Positions 29,292 to 45,399 of a stretch of 64,000 nucleotides of DNA are shown piece by piece. The notes under the pieces are model-generated. The model was not told the origin of the DNA and ran no database searches. It saw only the letters and a program-made list of their open reading frames with translations. Where the stretch lies: the sequence record KT919973.1; one strand, given 5' to 3'. Within the stretch, counting starts at the first letter, position 1. Every line of letters starts with the position of its first letter. A program made the position numbers and the translations under genes.

Positions 29292-30728
29292 TTAAAAGCT
29301 GTAGCGTTCGACGCCTACAGTTTTCATCATGATCTTGACTGGCTCAAGCTCACCACCCAACAGTGAAGTCAAGATAGATGGGCTACAACCAGATACCAGT
29401 GCAGTACCCGCTTCGCCAGCTTTAACCGGAACGTTGCCAAGACGACCACGAATGTTCCAGAAGACCAGTTGTGGCATTTCATAACCAGCACGTGCGTACT
29501 TGGCTTTGATTGCATCGAAGTTCGCAGGTTCACCACGACCGTACCATCCACCACCAGTGTTTGCTTGATCGAATTCCATGTCACTCATGATAAGCAACTT
29601 GGTTGGCATATCTTCTTGTGAAAGATTTGCACGCTTCGCACGTTCTAACAGAACATCAAAGCACTTACCGATGTTCGTGCTCATGTCTTCGCCTGAACGA
29701 TTCATGTTATCAAGACGCTCTTTCAATGAAGAGCCGCGCAACTGGTGGAAGTGCGGGTCGCTTGAGAACGAAATGAACTGATCTTTGAAGATGCCTTCAT
29801 TGCGTTCAGCAACATAAATCCCAAGAGACATTGCAACTTGCTTACAAGTCACACCTGAACGGTCTGTACCTGCGTTAATTGGCGTGCTCATAGAGCCAGA
29901 CACGTCAACAACAGGGATGATGCGTTCATCAGAACCTTCCATGTAGTTTGGCAGAGCTTTCCATTGCTCGTTCGCTACAGACGCATTACCGTGACTAACG
30001 CTCTTAACGACATCGTATGGGAACAATGCGCCAGCGTTGATCTTCGCTTCACCTTTTTGAAGTGACTCGATGTAGTTTGTGTAACGTGTTGAAGCGTTAC
30101 GACCGAATGCTTGTTGATAACGAGCAGACGCTACAGAAGGCAACTTACCGAAGTCGATTGCATCCCATTTTTGCGCACACATCTTCTGCTCAACAGTGTC
30201 AGACAGAAGCGACAGAATCTTACGCCACTGCTTCGCAGTTACGCCAAGAGACTTGATTGTGCGCTTGAACACATGACCGTTTTTGCTGTTTTCACGTGGG
30301 AACCACTTCGCAGCAAGACCATTCTTGTCATTGACAATTGCGTTCGACCACATTGTAATCGCATCTTTTTCAAGACGTGTACCGAAAGCAGAAATCAAGT
30401 CATCGTAACGACCTAGTTCTGGAATTTTCGACATTACAGCACGAGCTACGTCAGGCTGTTCATTACAAAGTTTAGTGAATAGAGTACGGAAAGTACCACG
30501 TTCACCCGCACCACCGCGAACATCACGAGACCACAAAAGAATGCGTGTCGCTAGTTCTGGGTTTTCTGCAAACGCACGACCGAACAGAGTTTTAGACTGA
30601 TCGTTACCACGCATAGCAGCAATACCGAAGAACAAGTTTAGACACTCGTTACCTGAAGTGCTGTGAGTAACTGCACCGTTTGCTGTACGTGAATCGTTTG
30701 ATTGCATAGCTGACATAAATGCTGACAT
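29292..30728 (-). CDS. DUF2828 plus vWA protein (Ro60/TROVE-like RNA-binding protein)
   Basis: TANGA..H.TS, RDVRGGAGER, GRYDDL, AAKWFPRE, DVSGSMS MIDAS, SDMEFD, VFWN. Confidence 0.85.
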   Translation of the reverse strand: MSAFMSAMQSNDSRTANGAVTHSTSGNECLNLFFGIAAMRGNDQSKTLFGRAFAENPELATRILLWSRDVRGGAGERGTFRTLFTKLCNEQPDVARAVMSKIPELGRYDDLISAFGTRLEKDAITMWSNAIVNDKNGLAAKWFPRENSKNGHVFKRTIKSLGVTAKQWRKILSLLSDTVEQKMCAQKWDAIDFGKLPSVASARYQQAFGRNASTRYTNYIESLQKGEAKINAGALFPYDVVKSVSHGNASVANEQWKALPNYMEGSDERIIPVVDVSGSMSTPINAGTDRSGVTCKQVAMSLGIYVAERNEGIFKDQFISFSSDPHFHQLRGSSLKERLDNMNRSGEDMSTNIGKCFDVLLERAKRANLSQEDMPTKLLIMSDMEFDQANTGGGWYGRGEPANFDAIKAKYARAGYEMPQLVFWNIRGRLGNVPVKAGEAGTALVSGCSPSILTSLLGGELEPVKIMMKTVGVERYSF

Positions 30729-36352: not shown

Positions 36353-36391
36353 AACGTCTCATCAATTAATGGCATGCTGCTCTCATGCTCA

Positions 36392-36424
36392 GACACATAT
36401 TTGCTCTTATTGCTGACGTGTGCC
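36392..36424 (-). ncRNA. small hairpin with TCAGCAAT motif in the loop
   Basis: GGCACA/TGTGTC stem. Confidence 0.45.
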
Positions 36425-36511
36425 ACGCGCTTCGCAGATCCACTTTAGATAATTTAAAGACCTAGCGGGACTCTTAGCAGGTCTATTCACTCTCTTTCGA
36501 TTCGCGTTGCT
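36422..36511 (-). ncRNA. about 90-nt structured spacer RNA
   Basis: ACGCG/CGCGT closing stem, AGACCT/AGGTCT and CTTTA/TAAAG hairpins. Confidence 0.45.
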
Positions 36512-36520
36512 AAGTGAATT

Positions 36521-36597
36521 TGGTGCCCAACCCGAGATTCGAACTCGGAACTCCTAGTGTTTGAAACTAGTGCCTCTGCCAATTGGACTAGTTGGGC
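36521..36597 (-). tRNA. tRNA-Leu(CAA), short variable arm
   Basis: cloverleaf, CCA. Confidence 0.93.
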
Positions 36598-36608
36598 TTG
36601 AATAAACT

Positions 36609-36700
36609 GCCGCGACTCTTTAATCCCTAACACCTGTCAGCTTTCGCTCGGCTGAGACCGTTTTTCAACGGCGGTAGTCTAGCTTCGTATAGAACGCGGC
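36609..36700 (-). ncRNA. about 92-nt structured spacer RNA
   Basis: GCCGCG/CGCGGC closing stem; CCGTT-GAAA-AACGG and TCAGC/GCTGA hairpins. Confidence 0.5.
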
Positions 36701-36713
36701 TTATGCTAGAATT

Positions 36714-36790
36714 TGGTACGCACGGGCGGATTCGAACCGCCATCCCTGAGATTTTAAGCCTCATGCCTCTGCCAATTGGACCACGTGCGC
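36714..36790 (-). tRNA. tRNA-Leu(TAA), short variable arm
   Basis: cloverleaf, CCA. Confidence 0.93.
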
Positions 36791-36792
36791 AT

Positions 36793-36866
36793 TGGAGCTC
36801 GAACAGGGAATCGAACCCTGACCTGCGGATTTGCAATCCGTCATACTTCCATTATACGATTCGAGC
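36793..36866 (-). tRNA. tRNA-Cys(GCA)
   Basis: cloverleaf, U73, CCA. Confidence 0.94.
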
Positions 36867-36878
36867 ATAAATGTACTT

Positions 36879-36955
36879 TGGGGTGACAGACGGGGATCGA
36901 ACCCGCATCTTCCGGAATCACAACCCGGGGGTATTTCCACTTCACCCACTGCCAC
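36879..36955 (-). tRNA. tRNA-His(GTG)
   Basis: cloverleaf, C73, CCA; position -1 is T. Confidence 0.92.
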
Positions 36956-37107
36956 ACCAAAGTACACTTTAAAAGCTTGCATTATGTCTTGGAGAAATAG
37001 ATAAATCTACTAGCAACACCGCCGTCGCTACCTGCAATACTTTGGGACATATAACGTTTGTCAACCGGACTCATTTGCGTGTGTCATTCGGTCGGAGCAC
37101 TACTCCG

Positions 37108-37347
37108 TCATACAGTTTTCTTTAAGTAGATACTATCAGCCGATAGTTCTCTTGTAAACATATTTTTGAAATAAATTTCGATGTCTGCTTCGGTTGTTGA
37201 AGACTCAATCGACAATGCAAGCTCTAAAATCTTGCCACGTTTATACCCAGCACGCCAACAATCAAACATAAGTCTGTCCATTTGCTGTAGCTTTTCGATT
37301 TGGTTGTGGTTTACGTATTCATGAGTTTCAAGTAATGCAGGCGTCAT
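37108..37347 (-). CDS. hypothetical protein
   Basis: 79-aa ORF with GAGA RBS between tRNAs. Confidence 0.7.
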   Translation of the reverse strand: MTPALLETHEYVNHNQIEKLQQMDRLMFDCWRAGYKRGKILELALSIESSTTEADIEIYFKNMFTRELSADSIYLKKTV

Positions 37348-37370
37348 AATTTATTTCTCATCATAAAGAA

Positions 37371-37444
37371 TGGTAGTCCCTAGTGGAATCGAGCCACTTC
37401 TTTCTCTGTGTAAAAGAGACGTACTGCCATTATACTAAGGGACC
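37371..37444 (-). tRNA. tRNA-Val(TAC)
   Basis: cloverleaf, CCA. Confidence 0.93.
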
Positions 37445-37450
37445 AAAATT

Positions 37451-37524
37451 TGGAGCGGGTACACGGACTCGAACCGAGACGAACGACTTGGAAGGACGTC
37501 ATGCTACCATTACATCATACCCGC
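37451..37524 (-). tRNA. tRNA-Gly(TCC)
   Basis: cloverleaf, U73, CCA. Confidence 0.93.
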
Positions 37525-37713
37525 ATTGTTAATCTGAAGCGTCGAACAAATCACGTATTGCACGTAGATTCGTAAGCTCTACAGTAAGTGTTCTTATAAA
37601 GAACGGGTTGGTCTCATTCGCGAGACATTTTTCAACATATCGAATTTTATCGCGTATGTTGCCCTTGCTTAGTGTAAAGTAGTCATGCTTCGTAACCTCT
37701 TTGTTTTTGAATT

Positions 37714-37789
37714 TGGAGGTGACACCGATACTCGAAATCGGATCTTACGCCGTATGAAAGCGTTGCTCTGCCACTTGAGCTACATCACC
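37714..37789 (-). tRNA. tRNA-Met(CAT), elongator-like, atypical T53-A61 and U73
   Basis: cloverleaf, CCA. Confidence 0.85.
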
Positions 37790-37929
37790 AATTGCAGTAA
37801 TTAACTCATTTAATCGCACACTGGCTGACACCATATATTCATGGTCTGAGTGAGGAACCACATAGTGGGTACTGTTACCTCTGCTTAGTTTTGATTGTTT
37901 TACATGACGATGACTAGAAACGTTCATAA

Positions 37930-38300
37930 TAATGCCACGCGATACATCCTATATCGCTGCTAACATCTAAGTTAGCGTATCTTGCCTTTCGGCTACAGTG
38001 TCGTTTCCGACGAATTAAGTACAGACAATACCGAAGTGTTTTTTCGTCTTTTGCATAAATCGGAGTTGACTAGCTTATTGATTCTCAACAAGCAAATATC
38101 GTCTGTTTCAGCGACGCGCCTATCTGACTATTTCTAGACAGAGAGAATCTTTCCTTTCAAGCTGCGCCTAAGCAAGCTCAGGTTAAAATCAGCCCAGGTT
38201 AAGATCATCACTTCTTTTAAGTAATTTCAATTGTTTGCTGTATATTGTCTCTCTCACCATGCTCGTGATATGCCGAAGCAAAGTATCATTCGTCGCATGA
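37930..38300 (-). ncRNA. large structured RNA (230-370 nt) with ATACAGCAAA motif
   Basis: nested stems CGACGAAT/ATTCGTCG (38008-15/38288-95) and AGACAATA/TATTGTCT (38023-30/38243-50); motif immediately 3-prime of the inner stem. Confidence 0.6.
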
Positions 38301-38313
38301 TAAGAGCTTAATA

Positions 38314-38389
38314 TGGCACGCCGTATGAGATTCGAACTCATAACCCCATCCTTAGAAGGGACGTGCTCTTCCAATTGAGCTAACAGCGC
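38314..38389 (-). tRNA. tRNA-Arg(TCT)
   Basis: cloverleaf, CCA. Confidence 0.94.
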
Positions 38390-38463
38390 ATTGAAAAGAT
38401 TCGAACCATGAACTAGTGTAGACGATGGTAGTAAAGAGAGTCTACGCTCATGTGTTCGAAATT

Positions 38464-38538
38464 TGGTGGACACGCAGGGAGTCGAACCCTATCTTCCTCA
38501 TTGCAAGTGAGGCGCTTTCCCAATTAAGCTAACGGCCC
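38464..38538 (-). tRNA. tRNA-Ala(TGC), imperfect acceptor stem
   Basis: G3:U70 present; acceptor pairs fully only with a bulged U. Confidence 0.85.
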
Positions 38539-38545
38539 ATATTTT

Positions 38546-38755
38546 TTACAACTGTGTGATTGAAATATATTCCCAACCGTATAAACCTTCAAGTTCTTCA
38601 ATCGGCTCACTAACAATGTCAGAAATATATTCAGCAACTTTTGCTTCAACTTCTTCATTAGATAATTCTTCACTAACGGAAAAAACATCTTCGTTATTGT
38701 TGCCACCGAAATCCCCACCAATGTCATATTCACACCATACAGAAATATAGTTCAT
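38546..38755 (-). CDS. small acidic hypothetical protein
   Basis: start moved to ATG 38755 (MNYISVWCEY); the ORF-track start lies inside tRNA-Thr. Confidence 0.75.
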   Translation of the reverse strand: MNYISVWCEYDIGGDFGGNNNEDVFSVSEELSNEEVEAKVAEYISDIVSEPIEELEGLYGWEYISITQL

Positions 38756-38779
38756 GTTATTCTCGCAGTTGTTTGAAAA

Positions 38780-38855
38780 TGGTGCCCTGACACGGATTCG
38801 AACCGCGAACCTGCTCATTACAAGTGAGCTGCACTGCCAGTTGTGCTATCAGGGC
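38780..38855 (-). tRNA. tRNA-Thr(TGT)
   Basis: cloverleaf, CCA. Confidence 0.94.
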
Positions 38856-38861
38856 GTTACT

Positions 38862-38973
38862 GAGTGTTATTACTAGCGTCGTCCAGACCAGTGATACCAA
38901 CACTGAAAGGGAATCGAACCCTAAACATTTCTTTCCGATAAGAATATTAGTAAATTGTTTGCTGAAAACACTC
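38862..38973 (-). ncRNA. about 112-nt RNA with TTCAGCAAA motif and an internal T-arm mimic
   Basis: GAGTGTT/AACACTC stem, AGGG-TTCGATT-CCCT, CAGTG-TTGGTAT-CACTG. Confidence 0.65.
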
Positions 38974-38982
38974 TTCGGTATT

Positions 38983-39056
38983 TGGCTGGGGATAACAGAT
39001 TCGAACTGATACCAACGCATTCAAAGTACGTTATGCTGCCTTTACACCAATCCCCA
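38983..39056 (-). tRNA. tRNA-Gln(TTG)
   Basis: cloverleaf, U1:A72, G73. Confidence 0.94.
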
Positions 39057-39075
39057 ATTGTTCTTAAATTATCTT

Positions 39076-39151
39076 TGGCGGAACCGACGGGTTTCGAACC
39101 CGCTACCTTCTCCGTGACAGGGAGACATGCAACCACTTACACCTCGGCTCC
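39076..39151 (-). tRNA. tRNA-Asp(GTC)
   Basis: cloverleaf, CCA. Confidence 0.95.
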
Positions 39152-39219
39152 CCAAAGACAACTTAAAGTAGTTGCTTTGTTTTTCAAGTTCACACTTAAC
39201 GGTAGTGACTCTCCGAATT

Positions 39220-39295
39220 TGGCGGACCGCCCGAGACTCGAACTCGGAACTCCTCGCTTAACAGGCGAGCACTCTAACCATTGAGTTAGCGATCC
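39220..39295 (-). tRNA. tRNA-Asn(GTT)
   Basis: cloverleaf, CCA. Confidence 0.95.
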
Positions 39296-39307
39296 TAAAT
39301 TTAAAAC

Positions 39308-39365
39308 AGTAATCCTTTTTGCTTTTTCCAAATAAAAGTGCTGTATTGTTTGCTGTAAGATTACT
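39308..39365 (-). ncRNA. minimal 58-nt motif RNA
   Basis: AGTAATC/GATTACT stem followed by TTACAGCAAAC. Confidence 0.6.
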
Positions 39366-39370
39366 TAAAC

Positions 39371-39444
39371 TGGCAGGGGCATAGAGATTCGAACTCTAAC
39401 GAACGGGTTTGGAATCCGTCATGCTGCCTTTACATCATGCCCCT
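39371..39444 (-). tRNA. tRNA-Trp(CCA)
   Basis: cloverleaf, G73, CCA. Confidence 0.93.
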
Positions 39445-39450
39445 AAAATT

Positions 39451-39524
39451 TGGTAGTCCCTAAGAGAATCGAACTCTTACCAAGCGATTATCGGTCGCAC
39501 GCTCTACCGTTGAGCTAAGGGACT
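39451..39524 (-). tRNA. tRNA-Ile(GAT)
   Basis: cloverleaf, CCA. Confidence 0.92.
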
Positions 39525-39588
39525 AAAGTGAGCACATTTCAGTGCTCGTGTTAATCGGTTAAGTGACTAAACTTCCCGGTTAACTAAT

Positions 39589-39687
39589 TGGCGGAAGACT
39601 AGGGATTCGAACCCTAACATCACCTCCCGGTGACCGACGGTTTTCAAGACCGTTGCCGCTACCCAGAATCTCTCGGCTAAGCCTTCC
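39589..39687 (-). tRNA. tRNA-Ser(TGA) with enlarged 15-nt D loop
   Basis: GCCG-AGAGATTCTGGGTAG-CGGC D arm, long V arm, CCA. Confidence 0.9.
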
Positions 39688-39693
39688 AATTAA

Positions 39694-39936
39694 TTATTTG
39701 TGTCTACCCCACATCAGCTTATCAAACTGACTAAGATATTCTTCAACTGCATCAGCATTCGCTTGACTGACAACCCAAACATTATCTTGTGATTTTGATT
39801 TGGTGTCTCTAACAGCGCCAAGTTTTTGCATCATGTTTCGATGTCTCTCTCTATCCATTGCACCACTAAAAAGTGAGCCAGAAACTCCGAAAGTAACATC
39901 TTTCGACTCGGTAATGAATTCATCAAATGTTTTCAT
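39694..39936 (-). CDS. putative internal head protein (T4 IP-like targeting sequence)
   Basis: MKTFDEFITESK vs T4 IP consensus MKTYQEFIAE; CTAAATA late promoter at 39964-39970 (-). Confidence 0.75.
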   Translation of the reverse strand: MKTFDEFITESKDVTFGVSGSLFSGAMDRERHRNMMQKLGAVRDTKSKSQDNVWVVSQANADAVEEYLSQFDKLMWGRHK

Positions 39937-39982
39937 TGTAATTTTCCTTATTGCGTAAAACAATATTTAGTCGAAATAAATT

Positions 39983-40059
39983 TGGTTGCGTGGGGCTGGA
40001 TTCGAACCAGCGTTCTCCGGCTTATGAGACCGACGAGATGACCACTTCTCTACCCCGCA
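39983..40059 (-). tRNA. tRNA-fMet-like (CAT), bulged A in the acceptor
   Basis: TGCGGGG acceptor resembles initiator tRNA; the anticodon stem lacks the three G-C pairs. Confidence 0.85.
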
Positions 40060-40069
40060 ATTATTCAAC

Positions 40070-40156
40070 AGCTTGCGTTCTTTGGTCTGTTTATCGCTGT
40101 CTGAACTGAGTTCGCCGAGCGATCAATAGATTAAGTTAAATTGCAGTATGCAAGCT
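40070..40156 (-). ncRNA. 87-nt motif RNA
   Basis: AGCTTGC/GCAAGCT stem followed by ATACTGCAAT; internal ATCGCT/AGCGAT hairpin. Confidence 0.6.
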
Positions 40157-40161
40157 AAAAC

Positions 40162-40247
40162 TGGTGGAGCGTAGAGGAATCGAACCTCTCTACCCGTTAA
40201 GGGTCAGGGATTTACAGTCCCCTGTCTCACCTTGAGACGTACGCTCC
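40162..40247 (-). tRNA. tRNA-Tyr(GTA)
   Basis: cloverleaf, long V arm, CCA. Confidence 0.93.
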
Positions 40248-40253
40248 GTAATT

Positions 40254-40328
40254 TGGTTCTCCCGACGAGATTCGAACTCGCGCACTTCACCTTGAAAGGG
40301 TGATGACCTACCGTTAGTCCACGGGAGA
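40254..40328 (-). tRNA. tRNA-Glu(TTC)
   Basis: cloverleaf, CCA. Confidence 0.93.
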
Positions 40329-40391
40329 ATTAAATTGTATATTGATTTGCAAGCTATCTAACTTGCAAAGCGATACACAATGTATCTAATT

Positions 40392-40468
40392 TGGTACGCC
40401 GCCCTGGACTCGAACCAGACACCTGAGAGTTAAAAGCTCCCTGCTCTTCCATGATGAGCTACCGACGC
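40392..40468 (-). tRNA. tRNA-Lys(TTT)
   Basis: cloverleaf, CCA. Confidence 0.94.
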
Positions 40469-40479
40469 ATTATAAAATA

Positions 40480-40554
40480 TGGTGCACCCCCTCGGAATCG
40501 AACCGAGCACTGCGGGACTTCAATCCGCCGCTTTTCCTGATAAGCTAAGGGTGC
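40480..40554 (-). tRNA. tRNA-Phe(GAA)
   Basis: cloverleaf, CCA. Confidence 0.9.
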
Positions 40555-40555
40555 T

Positions 40556-40632
40556 TGGTACGCAAGAAGAGATTCGAACTCTTAACTTCTGGTTTCTAAG
40601 ACCAGTGCCTCTGCCAATTGGGCTACTTGCGC
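40556..40632 (-). tRNA. tRNA-Leu(TAG), short variable arm
   Basis: cloverleaf, CCA. Confidence 0.93.
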
Positions 40633-40650
40633 ATTAAATTTTGTAAACTT

Positions 40651-40780
40651 CTTTTCTTCATTGTACATGATGTTTTTATCGTTGTAAACATCTTTTTTGA
40701 AAAACTTTTCATTCGATTTTGAATGATGTTTCGCTTTTCTTCATTGTACACGATGTTTATATCGTTGTAAACATCTTTTT
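40651..40780 (-). promoter_or_regulatory. two tandem-duplicated T4-early-like promoters
   Basis: 47-bp direct repeats (40651-97, 40734-80) each reading GTTTACA-17bp-TACAAT on minus with an internal GATGTTT/AAACATC inverted repeat. Confidence 0.8.
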
Positions 40781-40818
40781 GAATTTATTTTGAAGAACTT
40801 AACGTTTTCATTTTCTAT

Positions 40819-40852
40819 GTGTTAATATTAACACTCGCTCAAGACATCATAA
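40819..40852 (-). promoter_or_regulatory. promoter whose -10 lies in a 16-bp perfect palindrome
   Basis: TTTATG-17bp-TAATAT; palindrome GTGTTAATATTAACAC at 40819-40834. Confidence 0.55.
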
Positions 40853-40986
40853 ACACTAATTTATGAAAAAGTTCGTTAAATTCTATCATCTCGACAGTAC
40901 TTAACGAGATACGGTCCTAAGCGTATCAATTCGTAGAAGCAGTTTCGGGAATGTGCGAAATCGAGCTTCAATCAAACAACACTAAC

Positions 40987-41062
40987 TGGCACCCAATACA
41001 AGATTCGAACTTGTAACCTTCGCCTTCGTAGGGCGCTGCTCTTCCAATTGAGCTAATCGGGC
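40987..41062 (-). tRNA. tRNA-Arg(ACG)
   Basis: cloverleaf, CCA. Confidence 0.94.
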
Positions 41063-41070
41063 ATTAAAAC

Positions 41071-41147
41071 TGGTCCGTGACAAGCGATTCGAACGCTTAA
41101 CTTCTCCGCCCCAAACGGAGTACTCTACCAGATTGAGCTAGTCACGG
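41071..41147 (-). tRNA. tRNA-Pro(TGG)
   Basis: cloverleaf, CCA. Confidence 0.93.
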
Positions 41148-41156
41148 ATTTTAAAT

Positions 41157-41230
41157 TGGTCGGGACGAAGAGACTCGAACTCTTACCACATGCTCCCAAA
41201 GCATGAACGCTACCTTTACGCCACGTCCCG
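41157..41230 (-). tRNA. tRNA-Pro(TGG), second divergent copy
   Basis: cloverleaf, CCA. Confidence 0.93.
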
Positions 41231-41307
41231 TTTGTTCTTTAACTTTGTTTATCATACTCTGTAATCAAAGTACGTTAAACAAAATTTCTTAACTTTCTTA
41301 CGCCCAT

Positions 41308-41331
41308 AAAAAAGGACGCTATTTGCGTCCT
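41308..41331 (-). terminator. intrinsic terminator
   Basis: GGACGC AAATA GCGTCC T6 (minus). Confidence 0.85.
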
Positions 41332-41334
41332 CAA

Positions 41335-41520
41335 GTATACTTCTATGTTATACTATCGGACTACAAGAGGGTATCCCACTTCTGGTTCGCAATCGGATTC
41401 GCTAGATACACGAATTCTGAGCGCAGAAAATCGCTGCGTAATGTCTCAGATGAATGTGTAAACGAATGCGTCATTGAATGCTCTCTTGAAATAAAAATTA
41501 AAATTTGTTTTGTTTCTTTA
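41335..41520 (-). ncRNA. stand-alone rod-shaped RNA with an internal bubble
   Basis: TGT-TATAAG(TA) promoter-like site at about 41524-41534, nested stems CAAGAG/CTCTTG, CGCA/TGCG, TACAC/GTGTA, TCTGAG/CTCAGA, CGCAG/CTGCG, own terminator. Confidence 0.55.
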
Positions 41521-41601
41521 TAGTACTTATAACACTAAATCTGACGATTTGCGGTATTTCGCAGAAAATTGAAAAAAAATTATCAATTTTCTGCGATTTT
41601 A

Positions 41602-41838
41602 TTAACCTAAGTGTTTTCGCTTGTTCATTTCAGCAAGAATTTCGTCGTTGTAGTGCTTATTAAGCTCAACGAATTTCTTGTGCTGATCTGAAGTCAATTC
41701 GTTTGTATCGTTCAGATGCTTCAAAAACCCAAGAGGCTTACGAAACGACTTGCGATATTCATTCAGACGCTCATCTGTTAGATTGCGCAATTGTTTCGGA
41801 GTCAGTAACGTTTTGTTGATATTAAATGTTCCGCTCAT
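41602..41838 (-). CDS. hypothetical protein
   Basis: start moved to ATG 41838 after GAGG. Confidence 0.75.
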   Translation of the reverse strand: MSGTFNINKTLLTPKQLRNLTDERLNEYRKSFRKPLGFLKHLNDTNELTSDQHKKFVELNKHYNDEILAEMNKRKHLG

Positions 41839-41864
41839 GTTATACCTCACTAGTTTATCAAAAA

Positions 41865-41980
41865 TGGTAGTCGGGGCTGGATTCGAACCAGCGACCACGT
41901 GCTTAACAGGCAATTGAAGGAGTGCTGGAGCGATACTTGTCAGTATCATTCTTCGTGCTCTACCACTGAGCTACCCGACT
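41865..41980 (-). ncRNA. tRNA-Asn(GTT)-derived RNA with a 41-nt insertion in the anticodon stem
   Basis: removing AAGAATGATACTGACAAGTATCGCTCCAGCACTCCTTCAAT restores a perfect 75-nt tRNA-Asn with CCA. Confidence 0.8.
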
Positions 41981-41985
41981 ATGAA

Positions 41986-42507
41986 TTATTTAACTTTGAA
42001 TTTCAAATTTCGATATTCAAAGTTTCGTTTGTCTTTTTTACTGTAATACGTATCCCAATCAATAGAAACAGGACAGTTCTTACTACCCACACGAGATAAG
42101 AAAACGTCGTGAGTGTCTTTGTAAGCTTCTCTGAGAGACTTTACTTGTTTCTCATGATGAGTTATGTACTCAGCACACGCTTTGTTGTACTCAGCTTTAG
42201 AGAAGCGTTCATCGCCCGTGAAATTACCGTTTAGATACGGTCGAATAACACGAACACGTTCTTTAGACCATCCCATACTAAAACTATTTTCAATTCGACC
42301 GATGATTTCACCAGTCTTTTTACATCGTGCAAGAATAACCCAGCAACGCTCTCTTCGAAAGTCTTTTCGAGTGAATATATTGATGTACTTATCAACATAC
42401 TCTTGATAGCGTTCGTTATATATTTTACGAAGTCTGCTACGTTCTTCAATCGTCATAGCAGCACGTTCTTCTTTAGAGAACGCTTCAACGAACTTCAATG
42501 GTTTCAT
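41986..42507 (-). CDS. basic hypothetical protein
   Basis: start moved to ATG 42507 (MKPLKFVEAF) after GAGG. Confidence 0.75.
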   Translation of the reverse strand: MKPLKFVEAFSKEERAAMTIEERSRLRKIYNERYQEYVDKYINIFTRKDFRRERCWVILARCKKTGEIIGRIENSFSMGWSKERVRVIRPYLNGNFTGDERFSKAEYNKACAEYITHHEKQVKSLREAYKDTHDVFLSRVGSKNCPVSIDWDTYYSKKDKRNFEYRNLKFKVK

Positions 42508-42520
42508 TATAATTTCCTCT

Positions 42521-42760
42521 TGGCGCCGCTCGTGTGAATCGAACACACGTCAAACACAACACCTCTTCAACCCAATTAGAGTTTCGAAGTAAGAGCTAAT
42601 CAGCATTTCAGAGCAGCCGAGCGTTATTTCTACATACAAGACTTCGACATCTCACATGCACTTTCTACTCGGTCCCAGTGATTCGGTACCAACGTAGGTT
42701 GCGAGCCTACGTCTGCACTAATGTTGGGAATACACTGTGTATTGTACGCCAGTTAGCGGC
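42521..42760 (-). ncRNA. 240-nt RNA with tRNA-like acceptor/T-arm ends and CCA
   Basis: GCCGCT/AGCGGC-G-CCA, CGTGTG-TTCGATT-CACACG, several internal hairpins. Confidence 0.7.
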
Positions 42761-42764
42761 ATTT

Positions 42765-42995
42765 TTAAAGATAGCTGTCAAAAACATCATCACTGACTTC
42801 TTCAATCTTGATGTCAGCGTAACATTCGTTCGCAACTGCTCGAATTTCATCTATTGAAACTGTACCCGAGTACAAAACAACAGAGTCGTTCGGAATCACA
42901 ACATCACACATGTATCTGTCAAACATTTCAGTTCTGAAATCGTAATCGACGTAGCAGCCGTGCATTGATGTGATAACTAGCAATTTATGTGACAT
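42765..42995 (-). CDS. hypothetical early protein
   Basis: GAGG RBS; promoter immediately upstream. Confidence 0.8.
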   Translation of the reverse strand: MSHKLLVITSMHGCYVDYDFRTEMFDRYMCDVVIPNDSVVLYSGTVSIDEIRAVANECYADIKIEEVSDDVFDSYL

Positions 42996-43025
42996 AATGT
43001 TTTCCTCGTGTAGTTGATAATGTGT

Positions 43026-43054
43026 ATACTACACGTTGATGAAACGTCTGTCAA
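43026..43054 (-). promoter_or_regulatory. sigma70-type early promoter
   Basis: TTGACA-17bp-TAGTAT; inverted repeat CGTGTAGT/ACTACACG at 43007-43035. Confidence 0.8.
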
Positions 43055-43073
43055 CAACTTTTTCAATTTATTT

Positions 43074-43151
43074 TGGTGACCCCAACAGGACTCGAACCTG
43101 TAACCTACCGATTATGAGTCGGTTGCTCTAACCAAGTTGAGCTATAGGGCC
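43074..43151 (-). tRNA. tRNA-Ile2(CAT)-like
   Basis: GGCCCTA acceptor and ACCGACTCATAATCGGT arm resemble ileX-type tRNA. Confidence 0.88.
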
Positions 43152-43152
43152 A

Positions 43153-43521
43153 TTATTTCTCTAGAAATCGACCTACTTTAGCAGCGAAGATGTTTGCTTC
43201 TTCTGTAATACGAGCAGTCGATTTGATTTGATGAAATGCGTCTTGTTGATGCAGCAAATCGAGCTTATCTGCACACTTCATTAAATCTTTTATCGTTTTC
43301 ATAATCTCAATGTTATCAAACTGACTTGTATCAGGATGATGGTTGAGATTATCTAATATCGGCAGAACTTGTTGATAACAACCCATACCAATGAAGTTTA
43401 TCATAAGTCTGTATTGAATTTCAACCGAAAATGTACAATATTTTCTAAGATTGCGTTTTACAATCTCACAACGATGTAAAGTACAATCTAATTCGTTGTT
43501 TATACTATCAAACTTACTCAT
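43153..43521 (-). CDS. hypothetical protein
   Basis: start moved to ATG 43521 (MSKFDS) after GAGGG. Confidence 0.75.
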   Translation of the reverse strand: MSKFDSINNELDCTLHRCEIVKRNLRKYCTFSVEIQYRLMINFIGMGCYQQVLPILDNLNHHPDTSQFDNIEIMKTIKDLMKCADKLDLLHQQDAFHQIKSTARITEEANIFAAKVGRFLEK

Positions 43522-43537
43522 AAAACCCTCGAAATTT

Positions 43538-43656
43538 GGGAGAGTACGGGATTTGAACCACGTGACCAAAAGATTTACCTAGTTAAGGGTTGCAGAATGA
43601 ATGCTTATCAGAATTCTTTAACATTCTTTTGCTCTACCAGACTGAGCTAACTCTCC
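43538..43656 (-). ncRNA. tRNA-like RNA C with about 50-nt anticodon-loop insertion carrying ATTCTGCAA
   Basis: GGAGAGT/ACTCTCC, GCTC-AGTCTGGTA-GAGC, AAAGA/TCTTT, TTCAAAT T loop; no standard N73-CCA. Confidence 0.7.
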
Positions 43657-43661
43657 GTTAT

Positions 43662-43764
43662 CTACTTTGTTTCGCTTGTCAGGGCGCCGAAACGCTACCT
43701 AACCAAGGATTCGAACCTTTTAACCAACACCTCGCGAAAATTATTTTTCTCGTTGGCAAAGTAG
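43662..43764 (-). ncRNA. 103-nt multi-branch RNA with a T-arm mimic
   Basis: CTACTTTG/CAAAGTAG, CCAAC/GTTGG, AAGG-TTCGAAT-CCTT, GTTTCG/CGAAAC. Confidence 0.6.
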
Positions 43765-43770
43765 TAAAAA

Positions 43771-43907
43771 CATATTGAGCAGGGTGCAGGATTCGAACCT
43801 GCGTCACGATCTTGGAAATGATATGCTAAATTGATTGCAGAATACAAACTTAACAGCTTGCGTTTATGCTACGTGTGCTAGCCACTACACCAACCCTGCT
43901 CAATATG
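43771..43907 (-). ncRNA. tRNA-like RNA B with anticodon-arm insertion carrying ATTCTGCAAT
   Basis: 15-bp extended acceptor CATATTGAGCAGGGT/ACCCTGCTCAATATG, D arm, GCAGG-TTCGAAT-CCTGC. Confidence 0.75.
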
Positions 43908-44146
43908 TTCTTGAGAGTGCTTGTGGTTAATCACAAGCACCAAAAATCCTCTAGTTTATTTTGCCTTAGCTAATCAACACAACCTGAAATCGTGCGCTTT
44001 ATTTACGGGATGAATGACCCGTTCGCATATGATTAGCGCAAAAGTATGAATGCGCACCTTTTCTTCTTCAATGTCCAAGGCAAAGAGGACGATGAATACT
44101 AGTGCGAGAAGATATACAATCAAATTGTTCACCTCGCTTGATAAGT

Positions 44147-44293
44147 GAGAGTACATTGGTCGAGTGTAACGGAATCGAACCGTTCCCACGATCTCCCTAT
44201 GATATGCGTAAATTGGTTGCTGAATATAATCATGTCTGATTACAGTATGCTACGTGTGCTGCCACTACACCAACACTCGACCAATATACTCTC
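44147..44293 (-). ncRNA. tRNA-like RNA A (mature about 44157-44279) with insertion carrying ATTCAGCAAC
   Basis: CGAGTGT/ACACTCG-A-CCA, D arm nearly identical to RNA B, AACGG-TTCGATT-CCGTT, 21-bp precursor stem. Confidence 0.78.
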
Positions 44294-44696: not shown

Positions 44697-44951
44697 TTAT
44701 ACTGAAAGAATGATACCGCTTTCTGTCTCACCTCGTTCAAGCGCAGCGTGCTTGATTTGAAGCTGAGATACAGCTTGCTGAAGCTCAGTGATAGCTTTGT
44801 CGTAAAGTTTGTTGTTCTCTTTAAGTAAAGCAATCTGATCGGTCTGCATACCGATGATATACGTCAATAATACAACGTTCTCTTCAGTAGTTAGAGTTTC
44901 GGGAGCTTCATTGTACTTCTTTAATACTGCTTCAGTAGATAAATCAGTCAT
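44697..44951 (-). CDS. coiled-coil hypothetical protein
   Basis: ATG 44951 coupled to the 57B stop. Confidence 0.75.
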   Translation of the reverse strand: MTDLSTEAVLKKYNEAPETLTTEENVVLLTYIIGMQTDQIALLKENNKLYDKAITELQQAVSQLQIKHAALERGETESGIILSV

Positions 44952-45399
44952 TACTATCAACCCAATTTAAATCAAGTGGTTCAAGATATTCATCAACAAG
45001 CCGAACTTCAGCGTTGACGGGCATAGGTGTGATCGCGTCGTCATAAGACAACGTAACGTGAGGGGTATAGTCAGGGTAGTCGTGAGTACCACCGATAGAG
45101 ATAAGATCATCGTGACGTTCTACAAGTTCTGGACATACCATCTTAGCAACAACTGCATATTTGCCGTCTTGCGTTTTCCAACAGTCGATATGTTCAACAG
45201 TAGCAACGAAAGTGGTATCGACAACAGGTACATCAATTTGCTTACGACTATAAAGCACAGTCACGTGAAATTTATCTGGTTCTAACGGATTTTTTAGACG
45301 AAGCGTTTTCTGCAATCGAACTAACTCTTGCTTACTCGCCTCGTCTAATCTGATACCAACGTAAGTTCCCTGACTTTCAAGGAACTTAGATAGTTTCAT
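44944..45399 (-). CDS. 57B: gp57B / Acb1 anti-CBASS 2H phosphoesterase
   Basis: two HxT motifs (FHVTVLYSRK, YTPHVTLSY); T4 synteny 57B-57A-1-3. Confidence 0.9.
   Translation of the reverse strand: MKLSKFLESQGTYVGIRLDEASKQELVRLQKTLRLKNPLEPDKFHVTVLYSRKQIDVPVVDTTFVATVEHIDCWKTQDGKYAVVAKMVCPELVERHDDLISIGGTHDYPDYTPHVTLSYDDAITPMPVNAEVRLVDEYLEPLDLNWVDSND

What the first reader, a model, noticed from the sequence alone, without database searches (positions are those of the whole stretch)
41865..41980. tRNA-Asn with a 41-nt module inserted in the 5-prime strand of the anticodon stem
Seen: deleting the insert gives a perfect 75-nt tRNA-Asn(GTT) with CCA. The insert has its own hairpin (GATACT-GACA-AGTATC), a GAAG/CTTC stem and the motif variant TCCAGCAC, and the anticodon hairpin TGC-CTGTTAA-GCA stays intact. 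A normal tRNA-Asn exists at 39220, so this copy is free to do something else. The insert is far too short for a group I intron and is not at the usual 37/38 position. Inference: an evolutionary intermediate showing how the motif RNAs arise from tRNAs; possibly a decoy for GUN-specific anticodon nucleases.
Basis: partly seen in the sequence, partly recalled or inferred. Interest (0 to 1): 0.72.

Follow-up and report, generated by a model that had tools for sequence, protein, structure and literature searches.

The report
tRNA-shaped partner RNA for phage Ro protein
The interrupted tRNA-Asn gene is real and strictly conserved, and it is probably neither a broken gene nor an ordinary intron: it looks like a tRNA-shaped non-coding RNA whose extra 41 bases form a docking module for the phage's own Ro60-like protein, a layout found in hundreds of phages and, with the classical Ro60 motif, in cyanobacteria.

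Summary
Window 41865-41980 (- strand) is a 116-nt tRNA-like gene, and removing 41 nt (41913-41953) after position 28 of the anticodon stem leaves a perfect 75-nt tRNA-Asn(GTT)-CCA.

The window is Vibrio phage phi-ST2, a KVP40-like phage. The element is 116/116 identical to its KVP40 copy, while the flanks are 83% identical and flanking third codon positions about 62%.

The same design occurs in more than 100 IMG/VR phage loci, in tRNA bodies with at least 12 different anticodons. The insert follows position 28 or 29, carries a covarying 7-bp hairpin and the single-stranded motif YC(A/U)GCAA, and leaves the anticodon hairpin intact.

These RNAs lie a median of about 0.3-0.5 kb from a DUF2828/DUF7788 protein gene, always on the same strand. 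The window encodes this protein at 29292-30728, and its AlphaFold model matches only Ro60 structures at full length.

In cyanobacteria, tRNAs interrupted at the same site carry the classical GNCGAA Ro60-binding motif and sit upstream of canonical Ro60 genes. A mycobacteriophage RNA is an exact circular permutation of this design and is laid out like a YrlA Y RNA.

Best reading: an unpermuted, tRNA-type Y RNA, a new variant of a known kind. Binding, splicing and function remain untested.

The parts
41865..41980 (-). Element A: a 116-nt tRNA-Asn(GTT)-like RNA with encoded CCA. KVP40 annotates it as 'tRNA-Pseudo-3'; phi-ST2 mis-annotates it as tRNA-Ile.
   Evidence: Rfam tRNA 49.8 bits. ARAGORN calls a perfect tRNA-Asn once the insert is removed. 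Annotations. It is 116/116 identical across 24 KVP40-like records.
41913..41953 (-). The 41-nt insert, lying between positions 28 and 29 of the 5' strand of the anticodon stem.
   Evidence: An insert occupies the same site in all orthologues (A1) and in about 78 unique IMG/VR sequences.
41931..41948 (-). Insert hairpin: 7 bp (UGAUACU/AGUAUCG) capped by the tetraloop GACA (GUCA in nt-1, GAUA in 6E35.1a).
   Evidence: Alignment to model R1. The helix covaries across 40 family members, with 7 of 7 pairs changed on both sides and 89% of cells paired.
41922..41928 (-). Single-stranded motif CCAGCAC, the local variant of the family motif (A/Y)C(A/U)GCAA.
   Evidence: It aligns with ACAGCAA of model R1. 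The motif is invariant or nearly so in A4 and recurs next to Ro-like genes in 8 of 9 cultured phages.
41900..41912 (-). Intact inner anticodon hairpin UGC-CUGUUAA-GCA (anticodon GTT at 41905-41907). The outer pairs C27-G43 and G28-C42 flank the insert.
   Evidence: The split anticodon stem covaries: pairs 6-81, 7-80, 68-78 and 69-77 of A4 are 98-100% paired and all show changes on both sides.
29292..30728 (-). Gene for a 478-aa Ro60-like protein (DUF2828 + DUF7788/vWA, with an invariant MIDAS DxSxS motif). It is the presumed protein partner of element A.
   Evidence: Pfam hits DUF7788 at 1.6e-46 and DUF2828 at 2.3e-29. AlphaFold model with pLDDT 80.4. The top 13 Foldseek PDB hits are all Ro60, with E from 1e-8 to 1e-5 and TM 0.5-0.59. 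D275, S277 and S279 are invariant.
43538..43656 (-). Element B: a tRNA-like RNA whose anticodon loop is expanded by the same module (AUGUUAA + hairpin + UUCUGCAAC). It is the orthologue of KVP40 'Pseudo-4'.
   Evidence: Rfam tRNA 49 bits. Model R1 gives 27.2 bits, E 0.002, although B was not in the seed alignment. Sequences.
43778..43899 (-). Element C: a tRNA-like RNA (acceptor, D and T arms) with the module hairpin plus AUUCUGCAAU in its central domain.
   Evidence: Model R1 gives a weak hit (16.5 bits, E 0.39). phi-ST2 annotates it as a 122-nt 'tRNA-Cys'.
44160..44279 (-). Element D: a tRNA-like RNA with CCA, carrying the hairpin UAAUCA-GACA-UGAUUA plus UAUUCAGCAACC.
   Evidence: The module region (55 nt shown) is identical in KVP40, nt-1, VS1 and QD01. 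phi-ST2 annotates it as a pseudo-tRNA. Model R1 did not hit it.

Best explanation
Element A is a functional, tRNA-derived non-coding RNA of the Y RNA kind. The cluster transcript is presumably cut like any pre-tRNA, because the acceptor, D and T arms and the CCA are intact.

The RNA would fold into a tRNA L-shape whose anticodon stem carries a side arm at position 28/29. The side arm consists of an A-rich linker, a 7-bp hairpin, the single-stranded motif YC(A/U)GCA(A/C) and a U-rich spacer. I propose that this arm is the docking site for the phage's Ro60-like ring protein (window 29292-30728).

By analogy with Ro60-Y RNA particles, and with the tRNA-mimic YrlA in particular, the tRNA body with its anticodon hairpin would be the effector-binding half. 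It would tether or gate the Ro-like protein towards a factor that recognises tRNAs, such as a host defence or anticodon nuclease, an exoribonuclease, or the phage RNA-repair enzymes. The function would be in tRNA or RNA quality control or in counter-defence.

Shown here:
- the anatomy of the element;
- strong purifying selection on the insert;
- covariation of the hairpin and of the split anticodon stem;
- recurrence of the design in many tRNA bodies;
- tight same-strand linkage to Ro-like or Ro60 genes;
- the Ro60 fold of the protein.

Inferred: physical binding, absence of splicing, and the downstream function.
For: 1. Selection. The insert is 41/41 and the element 116/116 identical between phi-ST2 and KVP40, although the flanks are 83% identical and third codon positions 62-63%. 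The insert is retained at the same site in nt-1, VS1, QD01 and 6E35.1a, and the acceptor stem shows compensatory changes.

2. Family. About 78 unique sequences have an insert after position 28 or 29 that leaves a perfect 5-bp stem and a 7-nt loop. Across those parses and the later model hits, at least 12 different anticodons are represented.

3. Structure. 92.8% of cells are paired, against 55% in shuffles and about 36% for slid partners. The covariation score is 0.908 against 0.24, and all 11 pairs have changes on both sides.

4. Linkage in phage contigs. 79 of 122 IMG/VR loci encode a DUF2828/DUF7788 protein. The median distance is 499 bp, the strand is the same in 71 of 71 pairs, and the RNA lies upstream in 58 of 71.

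5. Linkage in bacterial genome contigs. There are 51 pairs, with a median distance of 264 bp and the same strand in 51 of 51.

6. The window encodes that protein, and its model matches only Ro60 structures over its full length.

7. Independent parallel. In Nostoc and other cyanobacteria, tRNAs interrupted at the same place carry the canonical Ro60 motif GNCGAA. They sit 143-926 bp upstream in 39 of the 41 pairs (the other two: 1525 bp upstream and 18 bp downstream), on the same strand (41 of 41), of canonical TROVE+vWA_Ro60 genes.

8. Cultured phages. The motif ACAGCAA next to a helix recurs 2-6 times on the same strand beside the Ro-like gene in 8 of 9 cultured phages from different phyla.

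9. Permutation. The Winky RNA is a circular permutation of an interrupted tRNA-Asn, and model R1 hits it at 28.5 bits, E 0.001. The Rfam YrlA consensus has the same junction nucleotides, UAUG and CUA.

10. Experiment in the literature. The Felixounavirus Ro60-like protein gp130 counters the Ppl defence system. The authors guessed that some of the phage's tRNA genes are Y RNAs (PMC11482910).
Against: - No binding or expression data exist for this phage.
- In KVP40-like phages the Ro-like gene is about 11 kb from element A, not adjacent, although it is on the same strand with the tRNA array lying between the two.
- Element A's motif is a variant (CCAGCAC, or ACCGCAU in 6E35.1a) rather than ACAGCAA.
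- Not every DUF2828 phage has interrupted tRNAs. Felixounavirus JN01 and Listeria P100 have only stand-alone motif copies, and an Erwinia jumbo phage has none.
- The perfectly preserved anticodon arm and the encoded CCA are not explained by a pure docking role, so decoding or splicing remain possible.
- Much of the IMG/VR support comes from one large metagenome (3300045988) and from searches that required CWGCAA, which biases the motif statistics.
Confidence: 0.62

Rival explanations
1. The insert is a true intron of a new, protein-dependent kind. The 41 nt would be cut out of the anticodon stem and the nicked duplex resealed by a phage or host RNA ligase (for example Rnl2 or RtcB), giving a functional tRNA-Asn. 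The conserved hairpin and motif would be the recognition element for the splicing machinery, which might include the Ro-like protein.
For: Removal restores a flawless tRNA with U33, R37 and CCA. The same holds for about 78 unique family members covering many anticodons, and 86 of 112 model hits have canonical 7-nt loops. In Listeria P100 the Ro-like gene lies in a block with an RtcB 'tRNA splicing ligase' and another RNA ligase. A break in a stem would leave a nicked duplex, which is the preferred substrate of Rnl2-type ligases (established knowledge, not tested here).
Against: - No splicing endonuclease is known in bacteria or phages, and the flanking ORFs have no recognisable domains.
- The insert is far too short for a group I intron, and no ribozyme family matches.
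- The same module occurs in RNAs that cannot be spliced into a tRNA: window elements B, C and D, the stand-alone stems in P100, 6ec and PBC2, and the permuted RNA in Winky.
- Some members carry an anticodon that does not fit the body, such as GCT in a class I body that coexists with a real tRNA-Ser. Otherwise near-identical RNAs differ only in the anticodon, GTT against TCT.
- 14 of 24 members in tRNA-rich loci duplicate a normal tRNA.
- Element A has A73, whereas E. coli tRNA-Asn identity uses G73 (recalled knowledge), and the normal phage tRNA-Asn has G73.
Confidence: 0.15
2. The RNA acts on its own, without the Ro-like protein, as a decoy or sponge. It would be an uncleavable or slowly released mimic of a tRNA anticodon arm that titrates a host anticodon nuclease or another tRNA-targeting defence.
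For: An intact anticodon hairpin is preserved, although a normal tRNA-Asn exists. The element lies in a counter-defence neighbourhood, with the Acb1 anti-CBASS gene at 44944-45399. Phage tRNA clusters are known to counter tRNA-targeting defences (literature cited in PMC11482910).
Against: This does not explain why the conserved parts are the hairpin and the YC(A/U)GCAA motif rather than the anticodon loop. It does not explain the tight same-strand linkage to Ro-like genes. It also does not explain why the same module occurs without any anticodon hairpin. The anticodons used are not restricted to GUN.
Confidence: 0.1
3. The element is a decaying pseudo-tRNA, a tRNA-Asn copy inactivated by a chance insertion or by recombination between tRNA genes, as the KVP40 annotation 'tRNA-Pseudo-3' implies.
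For: It is annotated as a pseudo-tRNA. A normal tRNA-Asn is present. Element B in phi-ST2 shows small defects, a bulge in the T stem and no CCA.
Against: It is 116/116 identical across phages whose neutral sites are about 38% diverged. The insert is retained with compensatory changes in distant relatives. The helix covaries, and the architecture recurs in hundreds of phage and bacterial loci.
Confidence: 0.02

Closest known systems
YrlA (Y RNA-like A; Rfam RF02553), the tRNA-mimicking Y RNA bound by bacterial Ro60/Rsr (Chen et al. 2014, PMC4201824; Wang et al. 2018, bioRxiv 10.1101/312249)
   Same: Both have two modules: a tRNA-like body with D and T arms, and a protein-binding arm that leaves the body through the anticodon stem. 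Both are encoded on the same strand near a Ro60-type gene, often in several copies. The junction nucleotides are shared: UAUG after the 5' strand of the anticodon stem and CUA after the arm. A mycobacteriophage RNA next to a Ro-like gene is an exact circular permutation of the interrupted tRNA-Asn design.
   Different: YrlA is circularly permuted. Its ends lie in the Ro-binding stem, its acceptor stem is closed by a loop, and it has no CCA and no anticodon loop. Element A has normal tRNA topology with a free CCA and a complete anticodon hairpin. Its arm is capped by a tetraloop and lacks the outer stem that carries GNCGAA. The conserved motif is YC(A/U)GCAA and occupies a different position. 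The Rfam YrlA model does not hit element A. The partner protein belongs to the DUF2828 family, not Pfam TROVE.
Ro60 and Y RNA particles of animals, Deinococcus and Thermus phage phiLo (PDB 1YVP, 2NVO, 9KOP, 9L5Y; PMC12135203)
   Same: The predicted partner protein has the Ro60 fold, a helical-repeat ring plus a vWA/MIDAS domain. Several small structured RNAs are encoded beside the gene, and a phage-encoded version already exists in phiLo.
   Different: Sequence similarity to Ro60 is undetectable by HMM searches. The known Y RNAs are stem-bulge-stem RNAs with a CGAA motif, not tRNAs carrying an insert.
Non-canonical tRNA introns of Archaea (bulge-helix-bulge introns at positions outside 37/38)
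   Same: Both are short inserts (tens of nucleotides) at a non-canonical position that includes the anticodon stem, and removal restores a perfect tRNA.
   Different: No bulge-helix-bulge can be formed here. No splicing endonuclease is known in bacteria or phages. The insert carries a conserved sequence motif and a covarying hairpin that are shared with RNAs that are not tRNAs.
Bacteriophage T4 stable RNAs C and D (species 1 and 2), encoded in the T4 tRNA cluster
   Same: Both are long-known stable RNAs of 119-139 nt with unknown function, encoded inside the tRNA cluster of a T4-like phage. They have tRNA-like parts, a T arm and a CCA-like end.
   Different: There is no detectable sequence or module similarity, and model R1 finds nothing in the T4 cluster. 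No hit to the Ro-like protein was found in the 5-kb T4 stretch examined, and the whole T4 genome was not checked.
Group I introns in bacterial and phage tRNA genes
   Same: Both interrupt a tRNA gene in the anticodon arm.
   Different: Group I introns are at least about 200 nt long, sit in the anticodon loop and have a conserved catalytic core. Here the insert is 41 nt, sits in the stem, and gives no Rfam intron hit.

Membership tests
Canonical elongator tRNA-Asn | Continuous cloverleaf of 73-77 nt, with a 5-bp anticodon stem directly closing a 7-nt loop | tested here: not met
   The gene is 116 nt and the stem is interrupted after position 28. ARAGORN in standard mode does not call it. Only the sequence with the insert removed is a canonical tRNA.
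Canonical elongator tRNA-Asn | Acceptor, D and T arms with conserved tertiary nucleotides, and a GUU anticodon in a U33/R37 loop | tested here: met
   Rfam tRNA 49.8 bits over model positions 1-71. The loop is CUGUUAA. The acceptor stem shows compensatory changes in 6E35.1a.
Canonical elongator tRNA-Asn | G73 discriminator, an AsnRS identity element in E. coli (recalled knowledge) | tested here: not met
   A73 in phi-ST2, KVP40 and nt-1; G73 in VS1 and QD01. The normal phage tRNA-Asn at 39220 has G73. Charging was not tested.
Group I intron in a tRNA gene | Self-splicing core (P3-P9, about 200 nt or more) inserted in the anticodon loop | tested here: not met
   The insert is 41 nt and lies in the stem. 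No intron or ribozyme family appears in Rfam at E up to 1.
Archaeal or eukaryal protein-spliced tRNA intron | Bulge-helix-bulge motif at the exon-intron junctions | tested here: not met
   [quoted passage not shown] No helix between the ends of the insert is supported beyond shuffled controls.
Archaeal or eukaryal protein-spliced tRNA intron | An EndA/Sen-type splicing endonuclease is present | not tested
   The flanking ORFs have no recognisable domain. The whole phage and host genomes were not screened.
YrlA (Rfam RF02553) | A match to the YrlA covariance model (permuted topology: Ro-binding stem - T arm - closed acceptor - D arm) | tested here: not met
   No YrlA hit falls on element A. The only hit in the window is a 21.4-bit chance match spanning three tRNAs.
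YrlA (Rfam RF02553) | GNCGAA(N)G Ro60-binding motif | tested here: not met
   The motif is absent from element A, whose motif is CCAGCAC. It is present in the cyanobacterial interrupted tRNAs.
YrlA (Rfam RF02553) | Encoded on the same strand within about 4 kb of a Ro60 orthologue (criterion of Chen et al. 2014) | tested here: inconclusive
   In the window the strand is the same but the distance is 11.1 kb (41865 against 30728). In other phages with the same RNA design the median distance is 264-499 bp and the strand is the same in 122 of 122 pairs.
Module-interrupted phage tRNAs defined here (model R1) | Insert after position 28 or 29 of the 5' strand of the anticodon stem, with both stem halves still complementary to the 3' strand | tested here: met
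   The split stem is 98-100% paired and covaries.
Module-interrupted phage tRNAs defined here (model R1) | A 6-8-bp hairpin followed 2-4 nt later by single-stranded YC(A/U)GCAA | tested here: met
   There is a 7-bp hairpin, then GCU, then CCAGCAC, which has one change in the last base of the motif. Element A and two of its orthologues were in the seed alignment, so their 55-60-bit scores are partly by construction. The architecture was recognised independently.
Module-interrupted phage tRNAs defined here (model R1) | The genome encodes a DUF2828/DUF7788 protein with the Ro60 fold | tested here: met
   Window 29292-30728. Model and Foldseek search.
Y RNA (functional definition) | Physically bound by a Ro60-type protein | not testable with these tools
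   This needs immunoprecipitation, gel-shift assays or a solved structure.

The most novel reading that the evidence does not exclude
The module-interrupted tRNAs may be conditional 'pro-tRNAs'. In this reading the Ro-like particle, together with phage or host RNA-repair enzymes, excises the side arm from the anticodon stem. An Rnl2- or RtcB-type ligase then seals the resulting nicked duplex and releases a working tRNA, for example when host tRNAs are under nuclease attack. That would be the first protein-dependent tRNA splicing pathway in the bacterial or phage world, and it would give RNA ligase 2 a natural substrate.
Probability: 0.08. Interest if true: 0.92.

Novelty: new variant of a known kind. 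Interest (0 to 1): 0.68.

Why it matters
Ro60 and its Y RNAs are conserved from bacteria to humans, yet their bacterial and phage functions are poorly understood. Many Ro60-encoding genomes also have no identified Y RNA.

If this reading is right, several things follow:
- 'Pseudo-tRNAs' and intron-like tRNAs in phage tRNA clusters, annotated as junk since the KVP40 genome, are the missing partner RNAs of a large Ro60-like protein family (DUF2828) found in over 700 sequenced phages.
- Cyanobacterial Ro60 has unpermuted tRNA-type Y RNAs that earlier permuted-model searches would have missed.
- YrlA-type tRNA mimics can be derived simply, by permuting tandem interrupted tRNAs, which bears on the origin of Y RNAs.
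- These RNAs keep a free CCA end and a real anticodon hairpin. That makes concrete experiments possible on what the tRNA half recognises.

A homologous phage protein already has a counter-defence phenotype (Ppl), so the system is directly testable in laboratory phage-host pairs. On the practical side, tRNA finders and annotators mislabel these genes (Ile, Val, Cys, pseudo).

Tried and rejected
- Motif TCCAGCAC alone: not enriched in the window.
- Self-cleaving ribozyme, group I intron or any other Rfam family in the insert: none found.
- tmRNA-like reading, with an invariant GCA as resume codon followed by a short frame. In-frame stops are seen in the B-type RNAs but are not consistent across types (inspection), and ARAGORN reports no tmRNA. 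Dropped.
- Anti-Shine-Dalgarno-like CUCCUU in element A: not conserved in the other members.
- Target-site duplication (TAGCATA repeats in C and D): it gives no tRNA when removed.
- Flanking ORFs 41986-42507 and 41602-41838 as candidate splicing enzymes: no Pfam domains, and only PHROGs of unknown function.
- Homology to T4 rnaC/rnaD: no similarity, and model R1 finds no hit.
- A closing helix of the GAAG/CTTC type between the two ends of the insert: not better than shuffled controls (a first attempt had a faulty pattern).
- Sequence-level link of DUF2828 to Ro60. Single-sequence and profile searches of the PDB gave nothing relevant: designed armadillo-repeat proteins and other chance-level hits, and S21/FlgF. 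Only the fold comparison worked. NCBIfam gave nothing.
- Literature searches for an existing description of tRNA genes interrupted in the anticodon stem in phages found none. The closest statement is a speculation in PMC11482910. One review (PMC10870794) could not be read.
- Anticodon redundancy as a test of decoding function: 14 of 24 duplicated, which is not decisive.
Full report
**What is there.** The window is 100% identical to Vibrio phage phi-ST2 (KT919973; window coordinate = record coordinate - 62000). This is a KVP40-like T4-type phage of the genus Schizotequatrovirus. On the - strand it carries a tRNA cluster from 36264 to 44279. ARAGORN tRNAs in the window, all in that span. The finding lies inside the cluster at 41865-41980 (-).

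Read 5' to 3', the element has a normal acceptor stem, D arm, T arm, discriminator and CCA. After C27-G28 of the anticodon stem come 41 extra nucleotides (window 41953 down to 41913). They are followed by UGC-CUGUUAA-GCA-CG, that is, the rest of the stem, a canonical Asn loop and the 3' strand. Removing the 41 nt yields a 75-nt sequence that ARAGORN draws as a flawless tRNA-Asn(GTT)-CCA.

The Rfam tRNA model matches the unspliced gene end to end at 49.8 bits with an internal gap. Annotators have called it tRNA-Ile, tRNA-Val or, in KVP40, 'tRNA-Pseudo-3'. A normal tRNA-Asn is at 39220-39295.

**It is not an accident.** The 116 nt are identical in the phi-ST2 and KVP40 lineages, although the surrounding 1.2 kb is 83-85% identical. 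Third codon positions of the two flanking ORFs are only 62-63% identical. At the flank rate, the chance of 41 unchanged bases is 4e-4, and of 116 unchanged bases 3e-10.

The more distant phages nt-1, VS1 and QD01 (97-98% identical) and 6E35.1a (about 86%) keep an insert at exactly the same site. In 6E35.1a the acceptor stem has changed by compensatory substitutions. The hairpin of the insert keeps pairing: C-G becomes U-G, and the loop changes among GACA, GUCA and GAUA.

**It is one member of a family inside the window.** Three further long tRNA-like genes lie upstream on the same strand: B at 43538-43656, C at 43778-43899 and D at 44160-44279. KVP40 has the corresponding 'Pseudo-4' and 'Pseudo-5'. 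All contain a hairpin followed by UUC(U/A)GCAA(Y)C. Element A has the variant CUCCAGCACUC.

**It is a widespread design.** A search of IMG/VR that required only element A's anticodon arm found unrelated phage contigs with different 51-55-nt inserts at the same site. A second search (GGTAGAGC ... CWGCAA ...

Parsing gave about 78 unique sequences. In each, an insert of 38-62 nt after position 28 or 29 of the 5' strand leaves a perfect 5-bp stem and a 7-nt loop with U33 and R37. The anticodons include GTT, GCT, TAC, TGT, TTT, GGT, GAT, TGG, TTG, TCT, GAA, TCC and CCT.

The inserts share this order of parts:
- an A-rich linker that often begins UAU or UAA;
- a 6-8-bp hairpin;
- 2-4 nt, often (C)UA;
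- the motif CAGCAA or CUGCAA;
- a U-rich spacer.

On a MAFFT alignment of 40 diverse members (A4), I counted the split anticodon stem plus a 7-bp insert hairpin:
- 92.8% of cells paired, against 54.9% in shuffles and 34-46% for slid partners;
- a covariation score of 0.908 against 0.24;
- all 11 pairs with changes on both sides.

A covariance model built from A4 (R1) recovers 112 matches in 100 IMG/VR loci, often two or three per locus. It also hits sequences that were not in the seed: window element B (27.2 bits) and the KVP40 and 6E35 copies of B, more weakly element C, and an RNA of mycobacteriophage Winky.

**The decisive context.** I clustered all ORFs of the 122 IMG/VR loci. The largest cluster is a protein of about 490 aa, present in 79 loci. 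It carries Pfam DUF2828 + DUF7788 and belongs to PHROG 850 'RNA-binding protein'. In mycobacteriophages it is annotated 'Ro-like RNA binding protein'.

It lies a median of 499 bp from the interrupted tRNA. The strand is the same in 71 of 71 pairs, and the RNA is upstream in 58 of 71. Most loci that lack it are short fragments. In all, 710 GenBank phage records encode it, including the KVP40-like phages. The window itself encodes it at 29292-30728 (-), just beyond the end of the tRNA array.

Sequence searches do not connect it to any solved structure. An AlphaFold model built from 25 homologues (pLDDT 80.4, pTM 0.77) has Ro60 proteins as its 13 best PDB matches. These are Thermus phage phiLo Ro60, Xenopus and human Ro60 and Deinococcus Rsr, with E from 1e-8 to 1e-5, TM 0.5-0.59 and about 510-580 aligned columns. 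Isolated vWA domains follow far behind. The MIDAS DxSxS motif is invariant. The protein therefore has the Ro60 fold, a helical-repeat ring plus a vWA domain.

**Independent parallels.** The same pattern run over bacterial and archaeal genomes gave two groups.

In 46 loci, mostly Lachnospiraceae MAGs and probably phage or prophage DNA, CAGCAA-module tRNAs sit next to DUF2828 genes. There are 51 pairs, with a median distance of 264 bp, the same strand in 51 of 51, and the RNA upstream in 47.

A second ORF cluster, found in 30 loci that are mainly Nostoc, Pseudanabaena and other cyanobacteria, is a canonical Ro60: in its representative, Pfam TROVE plus vWA_Ro60. There, tRNA-like genes are interrupted at the same place, after positions 27-29 of the anticodon stem, and keep an intact anticodon hairpin. 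Their insert contains G-N-C-G-A-A, the motif that Chen et al. (PMC4201824) identified as the probable Rsr-binding site of YrlA RNAs. They lie 143-926 bp upstream of the Ro60 gene in 39 of the 41 pairs (the other two: 1525 bp upstream and 18 bp downstream), on the same strand in 41 of 41, and often as tandem copies.

So two different Ro-type protein families each have, immediately upstream, tRNAs carrying a family-specific module at the same site.

**Link to known Y RNAs.** Next to the Ro-like gene of mycobacteriophage Winky lie three copies of a helix strand followed by (C)UAACAGCAA. The middle one reads GUGGACUCC-UACAGCAA-...-CCA-CUGUUAA-UGG-CG-variable loop-T arm-closed acceptor hairpin-UA-D arm-G-CG-UAUG...-GGAGUCCA.

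That is an interrupted tRNA-Asn(GUU) opened in the loop of the module hairpin and closed at the acceptor end. This is the circularly permuted layout described for YrlA.

The Rfam YrlA consensus shows the same junction nucleotides as the interrupted tRNAs. These are 'ggcg-uAuG' after the D arm and stem-'CUA' before the anticodon-like stem.

Stand-alone versions, with a helix strand followed by ACAGCAA, occur in 2-6 same-strand copies beside the Ro-like gene in 8 of 9 cultured phages from four bacterial phyla. These are Listeria P100, Bacillus PBC2, Staphylococcus 6ec, Enterococcus ZJGS2, Campylobacter CP81, Sinorhizobium phiM12, E. coli JN01 and Mycobacterium Winky. An Erwinia jumbo phage has none.

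**What it most likely does.** Taken together, the 41-nt insert is best read as the protein-binding half of a Y RNA grafted into the anticodon stem of an otherwise normal tRNA. Element A would be an unpermuted tRNA-type Y RNA for the phage's Ro60-like protein.

In known systems, Y RNAs gate the Ro60 cavity and tether Ro60 to effectors such as PNPase. The partner of YrlA's tRNA-like half is unknown. A Felixounavirus homologue of the protein, Bas63 gp130, is needed to overcome the Ppl defence system. Its authors speculated that some neighbouring 'tRNA genes' are Y RNAs (PMC11482910).

I therefore propose that the RNA is processed like a tRNA and docks the Ro-like ring through the hairpin and the YC(A/U)GCA(A/C) motif. 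Its tRNA body and anticodon hairpin would then engage a tRNA-recognising factor, in RNA quality control, RNA repair or counter-defence. Binding and function are inferred, not shown.

**Rivals.** A true splicing pathway would explain the perfectly restorable tRNA and the CCA, and I cannot exclude it, nor a combination of both roles. Several points argue against it:
- no bulge-helix-bulge can be drawn;
- no ribozyme or endonuclease was found;
- the same module occurs in RNAs that can never become tRNAs;
- some anticodons do not fit the body, and near-identical RNAs swap anticodons;
- many members duplicate a normal tRNA;
- the insert is as conserved as the exons.

A Ro-independent nuclease decoy does not explain what is conserved, nor the gene linkage. 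The pseudogene reading is refuted by the conservation.

**Caveats.**
- The IMG/VR and genome scans required CWGCAA and a particular D arm, so motif frequencies are biased.
- Many loci come from one metagenome.
- In KVP40-like phages the protein gene is 11 kb from element A rather than adjacent.
- No expression data were available.

**Verdict.** The ideas of a transient intermediate and of a GUN-nuclease decoy are not supported. The element is a new variant of a known kind, Y RNA or YrlA-type tRNA mimics. Interest is 0.68.

Noticed in passing
window 43538-43656, 43778-43899, 44160-44279 (- strand): Three more long tRNA-like genes (B, C, D) carry the same hairpin plus UUC(U/A)GCAA module. B has an AUGUUAA (Asn-like) loop start followed by the module. 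C and D have a different central domain that cannot be reduced to a tRNA. In phi-ST2, element B has a bulged T stem and no CCA, whereas the copies in KVP40, VS1 and 6E35 are intact.
   Followed up: partly
window 29292-30728 (-) and 30749-30755 (-): This is the Ro60-like gene (DUF2828/DUF7788). A copy of ACAGCAA lies about 20 nt upstream of its start codon, and Sinorhizobium phage phiM12 has the same arrangement (L254:2950). This may indicate autoregulation, or a leader RNA bound by the gene's own product.
   Followed up: partly
window 36243, 38965, 39356, 40147 (- strand), also 37288, 37798, 38241: AC(A/U)GCAA or UCAGCAA copies occur in the spacers of the tRNA cluster. Four of them lie 15-21 nt after a tRNA 3' end. 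For AC(A/T)GCAA there are 6 copies on the - strand against 1.74 expected (P about 0.009) and none on the + strand. Similar motifs in tRNA trailers occur in Bacillus phage PBC2 and E. coli phage JN01. The Ro-like protein may also recognise pre-tRNA trailers.
   Followed up: partly
window 44944-45399 (-): This gp57B homologue is an Acb1 anti-CBASS 2H phosphoesterase (Pfam Acb1, 8e-46). It lies next to the tRNA and Y-like RNA cluster, although the record annotates it only as a hypothetical T4-like protein (its KVP40 counterpart is called 'RNA ligase').
   Followed up: no
window 28718-29248 (-): The ORF immediately downstream of the Ro-like gene has an RNaseH_like domain (PF04308, 4e-17). It could be a functional partner of the Ro-like protein.
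   Followed up: no
window 38467-38538 (-): The Rfam tRNA model hits here (44.9 bits), but ARAGORN does not call it. phi-ST2 annotates it as a pseudo tRNA-OTHER.
   Followed up: no
window about 43680-43760 (-), between elements B and C: There is a remnant of a T arm (AAGGTTCGAATCCTT), followed by a hairpin GUUUCG...CGAAAC whose loop contains CUGACAAG. The same octamer spans the loop and adjoining stem bases of element A's module hairpin. This looks like a decayed further copy.
   Followed up: no
L130:3462-4013 (Listeria phage P100): A ROOL RNA match (86 bits, E 4e-16, below the Rfam gathering score of 99.1) lies between the tRNA array and the Ro-like gene. Downstream are RtcB, a phosphohydrolase and an RNA ligase. 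This is a possible link between large ornate phage RNAs and the Ro-like RNA-repair neighbourhood.
   Followed up: no
L134-L251, e.g. L139:3678-3772 with Ro60 gene at L139:4009-5607 (Nostoc): Cyanobacterial tRNA-like genes are interrupted after positions 27-29 of the anticodon stem by an insert of about 50 nt carrying the canonical Ro60 motif GNCGAA. They are often in tandem, 143-926 bp upstream of canonical TROVE/vWA_Ro60 genes in nearly all pairs, on the same strand in 41 of 41 pairs. They are probably unpermuted Y RNAs that searches with the permuted YrlA model miss.
   Followed up: partly
L010:4951-5029 versus L049:4062-4140: Two otherwise near-identical interrupted tRNAs from related phage contigs differ in the anticodon (GTT against TCT). 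Another group has a GCT anticodon in a class I (short variable arm) body, alongside a genuine tRNA-Ser(GCT). The anticodon seems to be free of the usual identity constraints.
   Followed up: partly
L132:6423-6790 (Mycobacterium phage Winky): Three motif RNAs lie downstream of the Ro-like gene. The middle one is a circularly permuted tRNA-Asn(GUU)-like RNA that the Rfam YrlA model did not report at E up to 0.01.
   Followed up: partly
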